Part shown: positions 348 through 21,530 of the stretch, piece after piece
How positions within the stretch are numbered: position 1 is the first letter of the stretch
Layout of the letters: each line of letters begins with the position of its first letter
DNA from: Octopus sinensis
Lineage: Eukaryota
DNA: 28,697 nt
Direction: 5' to 3'
Assembly (NCBI RefSeq): GCF_006345805.1
Contig: NW_021827496.1
Location: 1 to 28,697 of the forward strand
Made by a program: the position numbers and the translations under genes
Notes under the pieces: generated by a model
What the model saw: only the letters and a program-made list of their open reading frames with translations
Database searches by the model: none
Told to the model about the DNA's origin: nothing

Positions 348-355
348 CGGGAGGT

Positions 356-428
356 TGGAGAATCCGGGCATCGATCCCGGTACCTCTCGCATGCTAAGCG
401 AGCGCTCTACCATCTGAGCTAATTCCCC
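356..428 (-). tRNA. tRNA-Ala-AGC: tRNA-Ala(AGC), copy 1 (C40)
   Basis: 73 nt, GGGGAATTAGCTCAGATGGTAGAGCGCTCGCTTAGCATGCGAGAGGTACCGGGATCGATGCCCGGATTCTCCA. Full cloverleaf, G3:U70 alanine identity pair, AGC anticodon, eukaryotic Ala-type A54 T-loop, and a TATA-like element at about -28 to -35. Confidence 0.97.
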
Positions 429-1200
429 ACAACAACAAAATATGCTTATCTAACCAATATATAGTTTGTGCACGTAAGGTTCTTTCATATAGTTCATTTA
501 TTTTTATTTTTATCTACTTGTTGTATGTTTAACACTCGTAATTATATCTTGAATAACTAATTGTCATTGCTATTAATATACTTCTTACATTTGTAATCGT
601 TTCCCTATTAACACCAAATTCGTTATCATAAAATATATAATATTGCGCCAAATTTCATCCACGTGACAGCATGCTTTAGCTTCCAACAAGCTTCTTCTGT
701 CTGTCTATCATGCGGCGATTTTCTACTGCATAACTCACTAATTTCTAAATACGTGATTTTTGTCAGAATATCCGGTGGATATTTACTATTAAATACATTA
801 CTGACGAATAGATTCTGTTGAATAATTTTTAGTAAATGTATTAAATTTCCTTATTTCTTTAAACACGATTTAATTCTTGTGTTGCGATGTAATTGAATAT
901 TATTCGATAAGCTATAAAGAGTTACCTCCCTTTAAATTTTTTTTCTCATGTTCGTCTTATTTGATGTCAACAAATTTGAAGCTTTGTAAAACTGAGCAGT
1001 GTTAAACGATTACCTGTTTAGTTTAGTATATACATATACACCCTGACATAATCATTAGTATTTAAGCACAACATATACAATAACATCCACGTATCACACA
1101 TGTAAGCATAGATTCATATGCATGCATACATACATGCATGCACGCGTACATGCACCATACATACGTACATACAGGTATATACACATACATACACACAGGA

Positions 1201-3109: not shown

Positions 3110-3540
3110 TCCACTCCTGCGACTATACAACACATTGTACAGATGTTAAAAATCAAGTGATGCTTACGTCTAAAGCTTTTAAAAATGAAAACAGAAAAGA
3201 GAAAGGCCTCGCACGTGGCTAATGCTACTCTCTAAGCAACGTAGATAATTATTCAACTATGCAACCATCCATTCACCCATTCATCCATACATGCAAGAAT
3301 ACCTACATACGATTCACTTGACCGACCCACCTATGTATCTACTTACTTTCTGTCAAGGCACCTTATCATTTTATCTCCCAATTTACCGAACGCTTTACCC
3401 GTTCAGATATATTTTTCGCCTACATACATGCTGACTTACCTACCTCCTTCTCTCCCCCTCCATCCCTCACCCCTCCCTCCCTCCCTCCTTACCTACCTAC
3501 CTATATCTCTACCTGTCTACGGATCTGGATCTAAATACCA

Positions 3541-3879: not shown

Positions 3880-4230
3880 GCATGACATCGTAGATATTAT
3901 AATAATGTTCAATAAAAGCATTCGATCTGAAGAGTATTCACTTGTCGGGGCTGCAGAATTCTGAGACGCTACTGCTGGTGTCTTACAAGGAGACGTACTT
4001 GAACCTTTGTTATTCATATTTTGTCTTGAATTTGCTCTCAAAAAGCTAGAAGTTCTAAGCACCCAAAGTTTACAGTAGCAGATGCAGATTATGCTGATGT
4101 CAGCCCCAAAGTCAGATATCATTGCAGGAACCACTAACCCAATTCACAGACTTGAAGATACGGCGAGAGATATTAGGCCTCCATGCTACCGCCAGAAACC
4201 GGAATTTGTCATACAAAACTTGCAGTGTAC
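3880..4230 (+). pseudogene. Decayed RTE-like LINE reverse transcriptase fragment
   Basis: Ordered RT motifs across frameshifts: KAFD (~3915), AGVLQGDVLEPLLFIFCLEFALKKL (~3974-4050), DADYAD (4081-4098), then LEDTARDI..LH..K.EF. Contains internal deletions and stops. Confidence 0.8.
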
Positions 4231-5201: not shown

Positions 5202-5599
5202 TATTTCTTTATTGCCCACAAGGGGCTAAACACAGAGGGGACAAACAAGGACAGGCAAACGCAGTAAGTCGATTGCATTGACCCAGTGTGTAACTAGTAC
5301 ATAATTTATCGAAAAACAAATGTTATGAAACAAAATATATAAAAAAAAAAAAACTTCTAACAGAAAACGGGAGGTTGGAGAATCCGGGCATCGATCCCGG
5401 TACCTCTCACATGCTAAGCGAGCGCTCTACCATCTGAGCTAATTCCCCACGACAGCAATATTCGCTTATCTAACCAATATAGTTTATGCACGTAATGGCA
5501 AAGTCGACCTCGGCGGAATTTGAACTCAGAACGTGAGCTCAGACGAAATAGCGCTATGCATTTCGTCCGGCGTTCTAGCGTATCTACCAGCTTGCCGCC
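5202..5599 (-). mobile_element. SINE family A with 11-bp TSD, interrupted by a tRNA cassette
   Basis: TSD TTTCAGTTTCC at 5191-5201 and 5600-5610. The SINE halves 5202-5312 and 5497-5599 are colinear with the monomer, lacking ~16 nt at the break. Confidence 0.85.
5376..5448 (-). tRNA. tRNA-Ala-AGC: tRNA-Ala(AGC), copy 2 (U40 variant)
   Basis: Identical to 356-428 except C40>U (G30:U40 wobble). Retains the T4 terminator and the upstream TATATT. Confidence 0.93.
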
Positions 5600-6414
5600 T
5601 TTCAGTTTCCGTCGTCACCAAGGGTTTGGTAGGACCGAGGCTATTGTAGAAAACACTTGTCCAAGGTGTAAGGTTGAACTCTGAATCATGTGGTTGGAAA
5701 GCAAACTTCTTCTTACCACACAGCTACGCCTGAATCCGGGTCAGTGAATAGATCGAATAGAATAAAAGCAAATAAACATCTCATCATTGCTGGCCTAGAA
5801 AATGTGAAATTAATAAGATCACACACGTCCTGTATTTTTATGTATGTCGCAGACACAGATATCATAAATGGCAATAAAATATAAATTAGAATAACGATTG
5901 ACCTTGTAAATGAAACTGATTGTAAAAGAGAAAGACAAGCAAAAACACTGTCATGTGTGTTCAAGAAACACAGGATATTGATATTTTACAGTAGACAGAG
6001 AGTTGTGATAATTTATTGTATTGTCAAGAGCATTTAGCAACACAAGTTAAGTAGTTTATGAATCATAAATGATATCTCGGTTTGTCGGAAATTAGCAGTG
6101 ATGCTTAGTACATATAAACCTATTATTAAAGAGCCTTTAGATTAGTCTCGACATGTCTGTTGCAGTCATCGTGGTCAGAGCTGTACATCATCAGCATAAC
6201 TCGTGTAATTCATAATGGATAAAGTCGGGAAGTATACTGTCGTTTAGCTCCAGATCAGTGAATGATTTGAGGTCAGTTTCGTTGTTAATTTGAAGTGGTC
6301 GAGGTACCTCGTAAATCGCTGTTGTTGGTTCGTGTTTGTGAGTCATTTACCAAGAAGTGTGTATTCACCATTACTTCTTACACAACAGTATGCAAACAAA
6401 TTTTACAGCATCTA

Positions 6415-6495
6415 TTTATCTATATATCTATCCTTTATCTATCTATCTATCTAGTCTATCTATCTATCTATCTATCTATCTATTCGATCTATCTA

Positions 6496-6534
<39 letters not shown>

Positions 6535-6579
6535 CTAATCTATCTCTATCTATTCTATCTATAATCTATCTATCTATAT

Positions 6580-6613
<34 letters not shown>

Positions 6614-6749
6614 AATCTATCTATCAATCTATCTATCTATCTATCTAATCTATCTATATATAATATCTATCTATCTATCCGTCCGTCCGTCTGTCTATCT
6701 ATCTATCTATCTATCATCTTATCTATCTATCTCTTTCTCTCTATCTCTC

Positions 6750-6794
<45 letters not shown>

Positions 6795-6795
6795 A

Positions 6796-6839
<44 letters not shown>

Positions 6840-6905
6840 GCTCTTGATCTATCTATCTATATCTATATACTATCTATCTATTATCTATCTATATCTATCT
6901 ATCTA
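6415..6905 (+). repeat. Imperfect (TCTA)n microsatellite with (TC)n inserts
   Basis: Direct reading. Confidence 0.97.
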
Positions 6906-7404
6906 TCAGTCAGTCAGTCTGACTGTCTTTCTCAGAATCTCTCTCTCCCCCTCTCTCTTTCTCCCTCTCACTATGTATACTAATATATAAGTATATAATA
7001 TAATTATATTAAAAGGTGCAAGAAAATCCCACCAACACGCTAGAAATAGACGTCAAATATCTCTAAAAACCACATCTACACTCCATTAGCACAGATTGTA
7101 AGCCTGTAAGCCGGTAGATGAATAAATGAATCATTAAAATGCTTTATACCTAATTATATATATGATGTGTGGGTGTTATGTAATATATATATATGATCTT
7201 AAAATGAATTTATATAATATTATAATAAAAAAAGTATATGTATATTTATAAATATTATATATATATATAATATTTATTAGATAAAAAAAATAAAATAGTT
7301 CGGGGAGGAGAAAAAATATATTATATATATATTATAATAAAAATTAGAATATAATACATAATATGGGCGAATATATATTATATATATAGGCAGTTAATAC
7401 AGCG

Positions 7405-8519: not shown

Positions 8520-8614
<95 letters not shown>

Positions 8615-8684
8615 GTCTGTCTGTCTGTCTATATGTATGTATGTATGGATGCATATACATATACACACACATTATATATACCTC

Positions 8685-9849: not shown

Positions 9850-10611
9850 ACAGTAATTTCAGGTGAGGGGTAAATCGATTACAACAACCCCATTGTTTAA
9901 CTGGTACTTATTTTATCAACCCCGAAAGTATGACAGGCAAAGTCGACTAGGGCAGAATAATTTGAACTTGTAACATAAAGACGGATGAAATGCAGCGAAG
10001 CAGTTTGCTCGGCGTGCTAACGGTTCTTATTTCTTTATTGCCCACAAGGGGCTAAACATACAGAAATCAAACAAGGACAGACAAAGGGATTAAGTGGATT
10101 ACATCGACCCCAGTGCGTAACTGGCTGTTAATTTATCGACCCTGAAAGGATGAAAGGCAAAGTCGACATCGGCAGAATTTGAACTCAGAACGTAACGGCA
10201 GACGAAATACCTATTTCTTTACTACCCACAAGGGGCTAAACACAGAGAGGACAAACAAGGACAGACTTACGGATTAAGTCGATTATATCGACCCCAGTGC
10301 GTAACTGGTACTTATTTAATCGACCCCGAAAGGATGAAAGGCAAAGTCGACCTCGGCGGAATTTGAACTCAGAACGTAGCTGCAGACGAAATACCGCTAA
10401 GCGCTTAGCCTGGCGTGCTAACGTTTCTTATTTCTTTATTGCTCACAAGGGGCTAAACATAGAGGGGACAAACAAGGACAGACAAAGAGATTGAGTCGAT
10501 TACATCGACACCAGTGCGTAACTGGTACTTATTTAATTGACTCCGAAAGGATGAAAGGCAAAGTCGACCTCGGTGGAATTTGAACTCAGAACGCAGCGGC
10601 GGGCGAAATAC
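9850..10611 (-). mobile_element. SINE family A tandem array, 4 units
   Basis: Units at about 10428-10611, 10211-10427, 10027-10210 and an older 3'-terminal unit at 9850-10026 with the alternative 3' end. Confidence 0.9.
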
Positions 10612-10797
10612 CTGCTCACTGTCTTAAAAAGAGAAATAAAGATTACACTTTATATTACAAGGGATATAACTAATTTACATAAAGTTATATATCTGAGACG
10701 TTTACATGTGGTTATTGATCATGTGACAATTGAGTAATTGCGTTTATGTAAGCGTTTCGTTATCAAATGTGTTAAGATGATGCTTTCTACCTCGCAG

Positions 10798-13714: not shown

Positions 13715-14124
13715 TATATACATATATACATACCTACATACCCACATGGGCACATGGGCACAGACAGAGAAACACGTACATATATACACATATATACAAT
13801 GGATGCACATATAATAGACACATGGAGATGTATCAAGTACGTATATACAGAAAGGTAATGAAAATGCTAATTAACGCACGCAAGAACAGAAACGACGTAT
13901 ACATATTCTTGTACATAGAGACACATGATACAGACACAAGAACACAAATACACAGATATACACGGGGTATACACGCGTAGACATATAAACAACACACATA
14001 ACGCATACCCATTCTGAAAACACATCCAAAACCACAATATATACACACAAATGCATAGACAGAAGACACAAATACATACATGCATAAAAAACACACACAT
14101 ATATATATATTCACACATATATAT

Positions 14125-14237
14125 ATACATACATACATACATACGTACATACATACGTACATACATACATACATACATACATACATACATACATACATAC
14201 ATACATACATACATACATACATACATACATACATACA
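14125..14237 (+). repeat. (TACA)n, 5' flank of the REL-element insertion
   Basis: Direct reading. Confidence 0.97.
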
Positions 14238-14518
14238 GCTGCCCTGTAGATATAAATATCTCTTTGAAAATCAAAGAAAAAGAGGATATCTATGAACAAC
14301 TGGTTCGAAACTTCCAGATTCTATATCCATACTATGAATTCAAATCCATACCAATAATAATTGGAACACTAGGTTTTGTTGGTAAATGCTTAAAGAAGAA
14401 TCTGGATCAACTGGGGTTTTCAGAAAGAGAAATCGACCGGCTGATTCGGTCATTACAAGTGCAATCTGTGAGTGGAACTGTAAAAATATGCAAGACTTTT
14501 CTCAAGTTCCAAATGTGA
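14237..14518 (+). pseudogene. Uninterrupted 93-codon C-terminal frame of an REL endonuclease ORF
   Basis: SCPVDINISLKIKEKEDIYEQL...IPIIIGTLGFV..CLKKNLDQLGF.....IRSLQVQSVSGTVKICKTFL fits the R4/Dong-type (IEV)SCP.D.NI..K..EK..(K)Y..L...P.iiGaLG...L..LG...LQ...GT..I...L signature. The PD and D/E catalytic motifs lie upstream of the truncation point. Confidence 0.85.
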
Positions 14519-14595
14519 ATTTGTCTGTGTTAACTACATCCCAAAGTTGGAGCCTTGTATCTTCAGTGGAAGATTTATAATTAAAAAATAGAACA
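14238..14595 (+). mobile_element. 5'-truncated non-LTR retrotransposon, R2 superfamily (R4/Dong-like): REL endonuclease C-terminus plus ~75-nt 3' UTR
   Basis: Non-repetitive 358-bp insert bounded on both sides by (TACA)n; the encoded peptide matches the REL C-terminal pattern. Confidence 0.85.
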
Positions 14596-14609
14596 CATAC
14601 ATACATACA

Positions 14610-14643
<34 letters not shown>

Positions 14644-14744
14644 CGTACATACGTACATACATACAAACATAATACATACATACATGCATACATACATACA
14701 TACATACATACATACATACATGCATACATACATACATACATACC

Positions 14745-14778
<34 letters not shown>

Positions 14779-14950
14779 CATACATACATACATACGTACA
14801 TACATGTATATATACATACACATAAGCATACATACATACATGCATACATACATACATACATATAATCATACATACATACATACGTACATGCGTATATACA
14901 TATATACATACATATAAGCATGTATGCATACATACATACATAAATACATA
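14596..14950 (+). repeat. (TACA)n, perfect then degenerate; 3' flank/tail of the REL element
   Basis: Direct reading. Confidence 0.95.
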
Positions 14951-15619
14951 CATACTTATAATCACAATATATACACATATATGCATAGACAGAAGACACA
15001 AAATATACATCCATAAAGACATGCACATTTAAATACATACAGAGAAACATACTTCATTTATACATACATACATGCAGGCATACATACATTCACAGAGTGT
15101 TAACCGCAGGTGGGTGATTGAAAAAAATTTGATTCGATATTCCTGATAAAGATATTGAACATCTGATTAGTAAGAAATGTGAAGTAAGAAGGAAAAGTAT
15201 GTGGAGATAACACAAATGAATCATTTGGAAAGTTAACAGTCTAATGAAACGAGTTCTATATATTACGGGTATTATTTAGATTAGCAAGTACTGAAGGATG
15301 GAAGTCAAGAGAAACTGGGTGAGATTCGAAATAAAGCTCGATTTGACAAAAGAAGGAAAAAGAATTCCAAGAATATATCACAATATATTTATATATTGGT
15401 AAGTAGCTTACCAGTAAAAGAGTAAAAGAGTAAAGAGTATATGTAAACTTACATACGTAACATCTATAAATATCTACACACATATTGGCTTGTTGACTTT
15501 GCAATAATTTAAAGGCTCGGCAAACGAGACAGTCAGAATAAGTACCAGGATTAAATGTAAGTATCGGGTTGATTTGCTACTCTAAACACTTCGAAACGAT
15601 GCTCAATCCAAACGATGCT

Positions 15620-16790: not shown

Positions 16791-17554
16791 AAGGCGGCGT
16801 GCTGGCAGAAACGTTAGCACGCCGGGCGAAATGCGTAGCCGTATTTCGTCTGCCGCTACGTTCCGAGTTCAACTTCCGTCGAGGTCGACTTTGCCTTTCA
16901 TCCTTTCGGGGTCGATAAATTAAGTACCAGTTACGCACTGAGGTCAATATAATCGACTTAATCCGTTTGTCTGTCCTTGTTTGTCCTCTCTGAGTTTAGC
17001 CCCTTGTGGGTAGTAAAGAAATAGGTATTTCGTCTGCCGCTACGTTCTGAGTTTAAATTCCGCCGTGGTCGACTTTGCCTTTAATCCTTTCGGGGTGGAT
17101 AAATTAAGTACCAGTTACGCACGAGGTCGATATAATCGACTTAATCCGTTTGTCTGTCGTTGTTTGTCCTCTCTGAGTTTAGCCCCTTGTGGGTAGTAAA
17201 GAAATAGGTATTTCCTCAGCAGCTACGTTCTGAGTTCAAATTCCGCCGTGGTCGACTTTGCCTTTCATCCTTTCGGGGTCGATAAATTAAGTACCAGTTA
17301 CGCACTGAGGTCGATATAATCGACTTAATCCGTTTGTCTGTCCTTGTTTGTCCCCTCTGTGTTTGGCCCCTTGTGGGTAGTAAAGAAATAGGTGTTTCGT
17401 CTGTCTTTACCTTCTGAGTTTAAATCCTGCCAAGGTCGACATTACCTTTAATCGTTTCGAAATCGATAAATTAAGTACCAGCTGCGTACTGAGGTCAATC
17501 TATCGACTGGCACCCTCTCCCAAAATTTCGAGCCTTGTGCCTAAAGTAGAAACA

Positions 17555-20805: not shown

Positions 20806-21274
20806 CAGCATCGATTACAGTTTTGTAATTAGATCGACAACTTTAGTATCAAACGGATTGAATAGCAAAATTGAAACCTAGATAGATGATAAATAATGAA
20901 TGAGCCAAGGCAATAAACGAATAAACTGTTGTAAAACAAGATGCACTATAGTAAATTATGATGCGATTACACAAAAGACAAGTAATGGCACGATGCACTT
21001 TGTTCCTGTTACTGAATTGGCCAATGAGAAAGGGAAAAGATATGTAAGATATCAAAAAGAAAAGAAAAAAGATAACTTTTGCAAAACTGTGTCTGAAACG
21101 ATATAGATAAAACCGCTAACAAATTAATGAATGGAAAATCGATAGATAAGGCCATATTAAAACTACGTGAGAAATCGCCTAATGAAAATAGCCATAAAAT
21201 CAGCTTGAATGCCGAACGAAGGAAGTTCTCACTTGAAGATCGCATTTGCGTGAAACTCGAGTAGCAAGAAGAGT

Positions 21275-21280
21275 CTATCC

Positions 21281-21318
<38 letters not shown>

Positions 21319-21397
21319 ATCTATCTATCTATCTATATCTATCTATCTATCTACCTATCTATCTATCTATCTACCTATCTATCTATCTATCTATCTA

Positions 21398-21467
<70 letters not shown>

Positions 21468-21468
21468 C

Positions 21469-21508
<40 letters not shown>

Positions 21509-21530
21509 CTATCTATCTATCTATCTATCT
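21275..21530 (+). repeat. (TCTA)n/(TCTG)n microsatellite
   Basis: Direct reading. Confidence 0.97.

What the first reader, a model, noticed from the sequence alone, without database searches (positions are those of the whole stretch)
14125..14640. Candidate (TACA)n-targeting REL-endonuclease retrotransposon (R4/Dong-like)
Seen: a 358-bp unique insert whose left junction (TACATACA|GCTGCCCT) and right junction (AATAGAA|CACATACATACA) both abut (TACA)n. It carries a stop-free 93-codon frame with the C-terminal REL signature and a short 3' UTR, whereas the other LINE remnants in the window are heavily frameshifted, so it looks young. Established: REL-encoding non-LTR elements are often sequence-specific, and Dong (R4 clade) inserts into (TAA)n microsatellites. 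Inference: this is a 5'-truncated copy of a lineage that targets the tetranucleotide (TACA)n/(ATGT)n. I know of no described element with that target. A site-specific TPRT enzyme with a new target could also be useful for genome writing.
Basis: partly seen in the sequence, partly recalled or inferred. Interest (0 to 1): 0.8.

Follow-up and report, generated by a model that had tools for sequence, protein, structure and literature searches.

The report
LINE fragment inserted in TACA microsatellite
A dead 356-bp tail end of a jumping gene (a LINE that carries a restriction-like endonuclease) sits inside a TACA microsatellite, and relatives elsewhere usually land in ACAT- or ACTT-type microsatellites; this is a known kind of element whose target I did not find described for this endonuclease class.

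Summary
Window 14238-14593 is a unique 356-bp insert between (TACA)n arrays. It has a 93-codon open frame, a 75-nt 3' UTR and no other copy in the window.

The peptide is the extreme C-terminus of ORFs that carry RT, a CCHC motif and a PD..E..K endonuclease (293 HMMER hits, best E 2e-23). A model of the closest intact relative superposes on the endonuclease domain of R2 proteins (TM 0.70). The window copy starts after the catalytic PD and E residues, so it is a dead 5'-truncated remnant.

Across 19 independent relatives with a readable 5' junction, 14 have the same microsatellite on the 5' side as at the 3' end, always in sense orientation. That is 8 of 8 full-length copies and 6 of 11 truncated ones. 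Subclades use (ACAT)n or (ACTT)n. Two young copies carry (TACA)n only at the 3' end, so the repeat is also a tail and targeting is a strong preference, not absolute.

"R4/Dong-like" fits the architecture (no N-terminal zinc fingers) but could not be tested by phylogeny. ACAY repeats are already a known LINE target (Waldo), and endonuclease-type microsatellite specialists are known (Dong, Togen, some HERO). This is a new member of a known kind, of moderate interest.

The parts
14072..14237 (+). Left (TACA)n/(ATAC)n array, the 5' flank of the insert. The last ~80 bp (14159-14237) are pure repeat.
   Evidence: TRF; sequence; perfect-array scan.
14238..14593 (+). 5'-truncated remnant of an RLE-type non-LTR retrotransposon (356 bp). 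It is the only copy in the window.
   Evidence: tblastn of full-length relatives hits only 14237-14515. blastn of the insert finds no other copy. DNA alignment with copies L001 and L002.
14237..14518 (+). Coding remnant of 93 codons plus TGA. It corresponds to the last 93 residues of the ORF, that is the C-terminal half of the PD-(D/E)xK endonuclease fold (K..EK helix, PIIIG strand, terminal helices). RT, CCHC, PD and E are missing.
   Evidence: ORF list. HMMER hits align residues 1-93 to the extreme C-termini of RT/RLE ORFs. Model of P0151 and its Foldseek match to R2 proteins.
14519..14593 (+). 3' UTR (75 nt) ending in the A-rich ...TTATAATTAAAAAATAGAA just before the repeat.
   Evidence: Sequence. 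The same 3' end is seen in L001 and L002.
14559..14574 (+). Small 3' UTR hairpin, ATCTTC-AGTG-GAAGAT. It is a candidate recognition element for the reverse transcriptase.
   Evidence: A hairpin at the equivalent position in 8 relatives has five different but complementary stem sequences: 97.9% of cells paired, 5 of 6 pairs with changes on both sides, 0 of 500 shuffles as good. The alignment was made by hand, which biases it towards the structure.
14594..15089 (+). Right (ACAT)n array. The first 45 bp (14595-14639) are pure and could be the element's own tail. The rest is a degenerate array, presumably the old target.
   Evidence: TRF; perfect-array scan.

Best explanation
Window 14238-14593 is a non-functional, 5'-truncated copy of a non-LTR retrotransposon of the restriction-like-endonuclease (RLE) group. 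It inserted by target-primed reverse transcription into an existing (TACA)n microsatellite.

The lineage has a single ORF of about 1150 aa. In order, it contains a conserved ~75-aa N-terminal domain without zinc fingers, the RT, a CCHC motif and a PD..E..K endonuclease.

Proposed mechanism, by analogy with R2 and Dong:
1. The protein binds the repeat and nicks the (TGTA)n strand.
2. The element RNA ends in a few UACA units, because transcripts run into the flanking repeat.
3. These units pair with the nicked strand and prime cDNA synthesis.
4. A small 3' UTR hairpin upstream of the tail is the likely RT-binding site.
5. Failure to complete cDNA synthesis gives 5'-truncated copies like this one.

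What is shown: the identity of the fragment, the domain architecture of relatives, the microsatellite on both flanks in most copies, the fixed orientation, the two target types (ACAT and ACTT) that follow the protein tree, and the covarying hairpin.

What is inferred: which strand is nicked, that the protein rather than RNA pairing sets the specificity, and that the hairpin binds the RT.
For: Identity of the fragment:
- 293 HMMER hits (best E 2e-23), all aligning to ORF C-termini.
- The long hits carry RVT_1, a CCHC motif and RPD..E..K.
- The AlphaFold model of the closest intact relative (pLDDT 84.6) matches the R2Tg and R2Bm endonuclease domain over all 174 columns (E 6.5e-7, TM 0.70).

Same-family copies: L001 and L002 share the 3' end and the TACA tail. 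They have different 5' truncation points, and both have an ACAT-type repeat on the 5' side.

Full-length relatives flanked on both sides:
- (ACAT)n: L017, L035/L038, L036.
- (CTTA)n: L013, L015, L016, L040, L010-B.

Tally of 5' junctions carrying the cognate repeat: 14 of 19 (8 of 8 full-length, 6 of 11 truncated). P = 5.6e-15 at a 5% background.

Orientation: the repeat is always ACAT or ACTT on the sense strand.

Distant relatives at 40-43% identity also end in (ACAT)n (L022) or (ACTT)n (L023).

ACAT-type and CTTA-type copies separate in a tree of the 96-aa tail, and the window copy falls with the ACAT type.

Other (ACAT)n arrays in the window are not preceded by element ends, so such arrays exist independently of the element.

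The hairpin covaries.
Against: - Five of 11 truncated relatives lack the cognate repeat on the 5' side. L034 and L037 have unique DNA, L010-C has a minisatellite, and L019 and the L024 group have (AAT)n. L034 and L037 still carry 46 and 116 bp of (TACA)n at the 3' end, so the repeat can travel as a tail.
- The host genome could not be searched. The window's own family is represented by only three copies.
- Many relatives come from short-read contigs that break at microsatellites, which limits what can be seen of the flanks.
- No empty-site allele was found.
- The tail tree rests on 96 residues and has no support values.
Confidence: 0.85

Rival explanations
1. Tail only. The element inserts more or less at random and merely carries or extends a (TACA)n 3' tail, as many LINEs carry simple-repeat tails. 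The (TACA)n on the 5' side of the window copy is then a coincidence in a microsatellite-rich region.
For: L034 and L037 (99% identical young copies) have unique 5' flanks and (TACA)n only at the 3' end. ACAT-type arrays cover 5.3% of the window and are nearly all on the + strand.
Against: 14 of 19 junctions, and 8 of 8 full-length copies, have the cognate repeat on the 5' side. Some of these arrays are 400-580 bp long with no upstream copy to supply them as a tail. Both target types show the same pattern.
Confidence: 0.08
2. RNA-guided preference. The endonuclease has little sequence specificity. Insertion into the cognate repeat arises because the repeat tail of the RNA must pair with the nicked DNA to prime reverse transcription, so the tail sets the target.
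For: Tail-only copies show that the repeat is part of the RNA or cDNA. The two target units differ by one base (ACAT versus ACTT), and both types recur among distant relatives, which a tail mutation could explain easily.
Against: Target type follows the protein tree, and there is a strongly conserved N-terminal domain that could bind DNA. In R2, protein domains position the nick (structures 8gh6 and 9dou, from the literature). None of this is decisive.
Confidence: 0.3
3. The open frame is a host exon or a domesticated gene fragment rather than a transposon remnant.
For: The frame is intact over 93 codons, whereas L001 and L002 are riddled with stops.
Against: The frame has no start codon of its own. 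Upstream it continues only through a translated microsatellite. Every homologue is the C-terminus of an RT/RLE ORF. The catalytic residues are absent. An open frame of this length arises in 1.4% of shuffles.
Confidence: 0.02

Closest known systems
Dong (R4 clade), an RLE-type LINE specific for (TAA)n microsatellites
   Same: Single ORF with RT followed by CCHC and a PD-(D/E)xK endonuclease. No N-terminal zinc fingers. The microsatellite is both target and tail. Present in molluscs (PMC7998251, PMC3812793).
   Different: The repeat is a tetranucleotide, (ACAT)n or (ACTT)n, not (TAA)n. Clade membership by RT phylogeny was not tested. Two CTTA-type copies do have (AAT)n on their 5' side; this is unexplained.
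Waldo (WaldoAg1/2, WaldoFs1; R1 clade)
   Same: Same target class: ACAY microsatellites (PMC3812793).
   Different: Waldo encodes an APE-type endonuclease N-terminal to the RT. The present lineage has a C-terminal RLE and no Exo_endo_phos domain. The shared target is convergent.
Togen (NeSL-related, (TG)n) and the microsatellite-specific HERO families of the leech
   Same: RLE-type LINEs that specialise on microsatellites (PMC4640811). HERO-type LINEs occur in octopus (PMC10294476).
   Different: The target repeat differs, or is unknown to me for the leech HERO families (Repbase Reports 14:311, not readable here). The phylogenetic relation was not tested.
R2 (28S rDNA-specific; structures 8gh6, 9dou, 9nl2)
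   Same: The RT core aligns (E 1e-21 to 1e-24). The C-terminal endonuclease fold superposes (TM 0.64-0.71). The presumed TPRT mechanism is the same.
   Different: No N-terminal C2H2 zinc fingers. No sequence-level match outside the RT. The target is a microsatellite, not rDNA.

Membership tests
RLE-type non-LTR retrotransposons (R2 group: CRE, NeSL, R2, HERO, R4) | Single ORF with the RT followed by a CCHC motif and a PD-(D/E)xK endonuclease | tested here: met
   Met in full-length relatives (L013, L015, L016, L017, L035): RVT_1, CRLC..H..C and (R/K)PD-x13-E-..K. The window copy keeps only the last 93 residues.
RLE-type non-LTR retrotransposons (R2 group: CRE, NeSL, R2, HERO, R4) | C-terminal domain adopts the restriction-endonuclease-like fold | tested here: met
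   Model of P0151 (70% identical to the window peptide): pLDDT 84.6. Top PDB matches are R2Tg, R2Pm and R2Bm (E 6.5e-7 to 4e-4, TM 0.64-0.71) over the whole 176 aa.
RLE-type non-LTR retrotransposons (R2 group: CRE, NeSL, R2, HERO, R4) | Copies share the 3' end and vary at the 5' end (TPRT hallmark) | tested here: met
   The window copy, L001 and L002 are truncated at different points. L034, L037 and L039 start at positions 3214, 3255 and 2220 of a 3957-bp element and share the same 3' end.
R4/Dong clade | RT domain groups with R4, Dong and Rex6 in a phylogeny | not testable with these tools
   No reference sequences of R4, Dong, Rex6, HERO or NeSL could be obtained. The only references available were the R2 proteins in the PDB.
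R4/Dong clade | No N-terminal zinc fingers (PMC7998251) | tested here: met
   No C2H2 pattern N-terminal to the RT in five full-length ORFs. No Pfam zinc-finger hit.
R4/Dong clade | Diverged SANT/Myb-like domain near the N-terminus (PMC7998251) | tested here: inconclusive
   A conserved ~75-aa domain is present (RNRDY..KWTYELN..GYMKRLK.LWD.IHPE). Pfam, a PDB profile search and hhalign against c-Myb gave nothing significant.
R4/Dong clade | Inserts into rDNA or a microsatellite | tested here: met
   Microsatellite on both flanks in 14 of 19 copies.
Dong sensu stricto | Target and tail are (TAA)n | tested here: not met
   All 3' ends are (ACAT)n or (ACTT)n. (AAT)n appears only on the 5' side of two truncated copies.
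HERO clade | RT domain groups with HERO-1_BF, HEROTn and similar references | not testable with these tools
   No reference sequences. Octopus has LINEs in both the HERO and the R4 clades according to the tree in PMC10294476.
R2 clade | N-terminal C2H2 zinc finger(s) plus Myb, and insertion into 28S rDNA | tested here: not met
   No zinc finger. The target is a microsatellite. Only the RT core aligns to R2 by sequence.
Waldo (R1 clade, APE-type) | APE endonuclease N-terminal to the RT | tested here: not met
   No Exo_endo_phos domain in the full-length ORFs at E up to 1. The endonuclease is a C-terminal RLE.
Waldo (R1 clade, APE-type) | ACAY microsatellite target | tested here: met
   (ACAT)n flanks in the window copy, L002, L017, L035, L036 and L039.

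The most novel reading that the evidence does not exclude
The window fragment is a marker for a widely distributed and so far undescribed lineage of RLE LINEs. It is seen in marine metagenome-derived animal contigs and in this genome. Its microsatellite specificity has switched between (ACAT)n and (ACTT)n, units that differ by one base. The switch would be set largely by the repeat tail of the element's own RNA pairing with the nicked target. That would make target choice naturally RNA-programmable in an RLE retrotransposon.
Probability: 0.2. Interest if true: 0.65.

Novelty: new member of a known kind. Interest (0 to 1): 0.35.

Why it matters
Site-specific RLE retrotransposons are the model for target-primed reverse transcription and are being engineered for DNA insertion. 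This is a clade with intact ORFs in L015 and L017 and near-identical young copies in L035 and L036. Its sister lineages prefer repeats that differ by one base, which gives a natural system for asking whether the protein or the RNA tail determines where such elements land.

For genome annotation, the lineage explains a class of unique islands inside ACAT/ACTT microsatellites. It may also contribute to the growth and strand bias of those arrays.

The window copy itself is an inert fragment. The element type (a microsatellite-specific RLE LINE) and the target (ACAY) are each already known, so the gain is incremental.

Tried and rejected
- Pfam on the 93-aa peptide gave nothing.
- The word-indexed protein search with the peptide alone gave one hit. 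The exhaustive HMMER search was needed.
- Pfam on ten other window ORFs gave nothing.
- I tried to find a paralogous empty site in the window. Only a ~45-bp motif is shared (14031-14080 and 14963-15012), which is not usable.
- MAFFT alignment of 3' UTRs across subgroups was poor, so the hairpin was aligned by hand. This biases the pair counts towards the structure.
- I tried to get reference sequences for an RT tree from paper supplements and older papers. None held sequences or were available.
- I tried to identify the species of the SRA runs that hold L001 and L002 through the literature. That failed.
- Cluster look-up gave no names or organisms.
- The N-terminal domain gave nothing significant with Pfam, a PDB profile search or hhalign against c-Myb.
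- The TARA loci L005-L009 and L024-L033 proved to be single loci sampled repeatedly, so each group counts once.
- My first tally wrongly credited L010 copy C with a cognate 5' repeat. This was corrected after reading the sequence.
- The exon/domestication reading was rejected (see rival explanations).

Full report
**What is in the window.** Positions 14072-14237 are an (ATAC)n/(TACA)n array and 14595-15089 an (ACAT)n array (TRF). Between them lies 356 bp of unique sequence, 14238-14593. The junctions are ...TACATACATACA|GCTGCCCTGTAG and ...AAAAAATAGAA|CACATACATACA. The frame starting at 14237 is open for 93 codons and ends at TGA 14516-14518, leaving a 75-nt 3' UTR. An open frame this long arises in 285 of 20000 composition-matched shuffles, so it is only mildly unusual on its own. 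No second copy, and no fragment of the 3' end, exists elsewhere in the window. ACAT-type arrays make up 1529 bp, or 5.3% of the window. Perfect arrays are almost all on the + strand, 789 bp against 41 bp.

**What the peptide is.** Pfam does not recognise it. An exhaustive HMMER search of 1.84 billion representative proteins gave 293 hits at E <= 1e-3, the best at 2e-23. In every case the match is to the extreme C-terminus of the subject. The long subjects (649-1085 aa) carry RVT_1, a weak zf-RVT match that corresponds to a CCHC motif, and the string NRPD..(13 aa)..IIEVSCP.D.N..K..EK. The window peptide begins at "SCPVDINISLKIKEKE". That is just after the catalytic PD and E residues, so it holds only the distal lysine helix and the C-terminal remainder of the domain.

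I modelled the C-terminal 176 aa of P0151, the closest intact relative (70% identical to the window peptide; its residues 84-176 correspond to it). The alignment had 44 sequences, mean pLDDT was 84.6 and pTM 0.80. Foldseek against the PDB put six R2 retrotransposon chains first: R2Tg 9dou_A at E 6.5e-7 and TM 0.70 over 174 columns, and R2Bm 8gh6_A at TM 0.64.

**Copies of the same family.** Only two were reachable, both in Logan assemblies of SRA runs of unknown species. L002 is 80% identical in DNA and L001 77%. Both are decayed.
- L002 runs from (ACAT)5 at the contig start, through about 880 bp of element, to ...AAAATAAGAGA|TGCATACATACATACATACATA.
- L001 starts after a degenerate ACAT-type stretch and ends ...TTAGAAGA|TACATACATATATATA followed by unique DNA.

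The three copies share the 3' end and have three different 5' truncation points.

**The wider clade.** A profile of the C-terminal region found 359 proteins and ten loci in metagenome contigs. Further loci came from look-ups of individual proteins. Full-length copies have one ORF of about 1150 aa. L017 and L015 are intact. All have CCHC and (R/K)PD-x13-E..K, and none has a C2H2 motif N-terminal to the RT. A strongly conserved ~75-aa domain sits at the N-terminus.

All eight full-length copies begin 240-310 bp upstream of the start codon, directly after a microsatellite, and where the 3' end is visible they finish in the same microsatellite:
- (ACAT)n: L017, L035/L038 and L036.
- (CTTA)n, which is the same repeat as (ACTT)n: L013, L015, L016, L040 and L010-B.

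In L035 and L036 the upstream arrays are 400-580 bp long, and no element lies beyond them.

Of eleven 5'-truncated copies, six have the cognate repeat on the 5' side: the window copy, L001, L002, L039, L014 and L010-A. Five do not:
- L034 and L037 have unique DNA.
- L010-C has a minisatellite.
- L019 and the L024 group have (AAT)n.

In total 14 of 19 junctions carry the cognate repeat. P = 5.6e-15 if the background is 5%, and 7e-7 even at 20%. The repeat is always ACAT or ACTT on the sense strand. Relatives at only 40-43% identity also end in (ACAT)n (L022) or (ACTT)n (L023). In a neighbour-joining tree of the 96-aa tail, the ACAT-type copies, including the window copy, separate from the CTTA-type copies. 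That tree is short and has no support values.

**The repeat is also a tail.** L034-L039 belong to a family whose copies are about 99% identical to a 3957-bp element. L035/L038 and L036 each have one private nonsense codon, so the family was active recently. L034 and L037 have unique 5' flanks yet carry 46 and 116 bp of (TACA)n at the 3' end, followed by unique DNA. The element RNA, or its cDNA, therefore brings the repeat along, and insertion outside the repeat happens. Full-length copies are 8 of 8 in the repeat and truncated copies 6 of 11. This pattern resembles R2, where truncated insertions often come with 5' target deletions (my knowledge, not tested here). It could also reflect off-target events.

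**A conserved 3' UTR hairpin.** A 6-bp stem with a loop of TTGTT or a close variant (AGTG in the window copy) lies 19-70 nt before the 3' end. The stem sequences found were:

| Copy | Stem (5' arm / 3' arm) |
|---|---|
| L003, L017 | GCTATA / TATAGC |
| L004 | GTTATA / TATAAC |
| L015, L019, L020 | GATTTC / GAAATC |
| L023 | GTTGTT / AACAAC |
| window (14559-14574) | ATCTTC / GAAGAT |

On a hand-made alignment, 97.9% of cells pair, 5 of 6 pairs change on both sides, and 0 of 500 shuffles do as well. I take it as the likely RT-binding element. This is inference.

**Mechanism proposed.**
1. The protein recognises the repeat and nicks the (TGTA)n strand.
2. UACA units at the RNA 3' end pair with the nicked strand and prime reverse transcription.
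3. Incomplete cDNA synthesis yields truncated copies such as the one in the window.

Whether the protein or the RNA tail sets the specificity is open. Target type follows the protein tree, and a conserved N-terminal domain exists, which favours the protein. The tail-only copies and the one-base difference between ACAT and ACTT keep the RNA-pairing alternative alive.

**Comparison with what is known.** Microsatellite-specific LINEs are established:

| Element | Target | Type |
|---|---|---|
| Dong | (TAA)n | R4 clade, RLE |
| Togen | (TG)n | NeSL-related, RLE |
| some HERO families | microsatellites | RLE |
| Waldo | (ACAY)n | APE |
| Mino | (AC)n | APE |
| Kibi | (TC)n | APE |
| Koshi | (TTC)n | APE |

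The statement that no element is known to target this repeat is therefore wrong. Waldo targets it, but with a different endonuclease.

R4/Dong elements are described as RT plus REL endonuclease, inserting in rDNA or microsatellites, lacking N-terminal zinc fingers and having a diverged SANT/Myb-like N-terminal domain (PMC7998251). The present clade matches the first three points. The Myb-like nature of its N-terminal domain could not be confirmed. R4-Dong and HERO LINEs are both reported in octopus genomes (PMC10294476). I could not build an RT tree for lack of reference sequences, so "R4/Dong-like" is plausible (my estimate about 0.55) but unproven. It is not an R2-clade element. I found no paper describing an RLE element specific for (ACAT)n or (ACTT)n. 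Repbase Reports could not be read, and the family may well be catalogued there.

**Verdict.** It is a dead fragment of a microsatellite-preferring RLE LINE, a new member of a known kind. Interest is moderate and lies in the clade rather than in the window copy.

Noticed in passing
window 353-429 (-) and 5373-5449 (-): Two tRNA-Ala(AGC) genes 5 kb apart on the same strand (Rfam 57.5 and 54.2 bits; ARAGORN agrees). They could be a local duplication or the heads of tRNA-derived repeats.
   Followed up: no
window 10028-10612 (+) and 16841-17508 (-): Tandem arrays of a 184/217-bp unit (88-90% matches). The two arrays are reverse complements of each other and lie on either side of the microsatellite-rich region that holds the insert. 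The units look SINE-like.
   Followed up: no
window, whole: Perfect (ACAT)n arrays show a strong strand bias: 789 bp on the + strand against 41 bp on the - strand. None of the other arrays is preceded by an end of this element.
   Followed up: partly
window 14031-14080 and 14963-15012: A ~45-bp motif (CACAATATATACACA..ATGCATAGACAGAAGACACAAA) occurs just before the left array and just after the right array. This suggests an older local duplication of motif plus array.
   Followed up: partly
L019 1-51; L024-L033 1-48: Two independent 5'-truncated CTTA-type copies have (ATA)n/(AAT)n on their 5' side. On the sense strand this is (TAA)n, the canonical Dong target. It could be chance or a trace of an ancestral specificity.
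   Followed up: no
L010 160-2900: Copies are chained head to tail through their repeats: (TTAC)n, truncated copy A, then (ACTG)n/(GCTG)n/(ACTT)n, then the 5' end of full-length copy B. The tail of copy A has drifted to ACTG/GCTG units. A similar drift to (TGAC)n/(GACG)n is seen at L021 3825-3885.
   Followed up: partly
L034-L039 (ENA ERZ25067561, ERZ25067570, ERZ25878469): A 3957-bp ACAT-type family with ~99% identical copies. L035/L038 and L036 each have one private nonsense codon, so the family was active recently and its source copy is probably intact.
   Followed up: partly
window 3971-4027: Weak RT-like tblastn match (E 0.2-0.4) to the region around the RT active site of the relatives. 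It may be a remnant of another LINE.
   Followed up: no
window 6410-6907, 8520-8632, 21274-21530: Long (ATCT)n/(TCTA)n tetranucleotide arrays, one of 498 bp. I did not check them for inserted element fragments.
   Followed up: no
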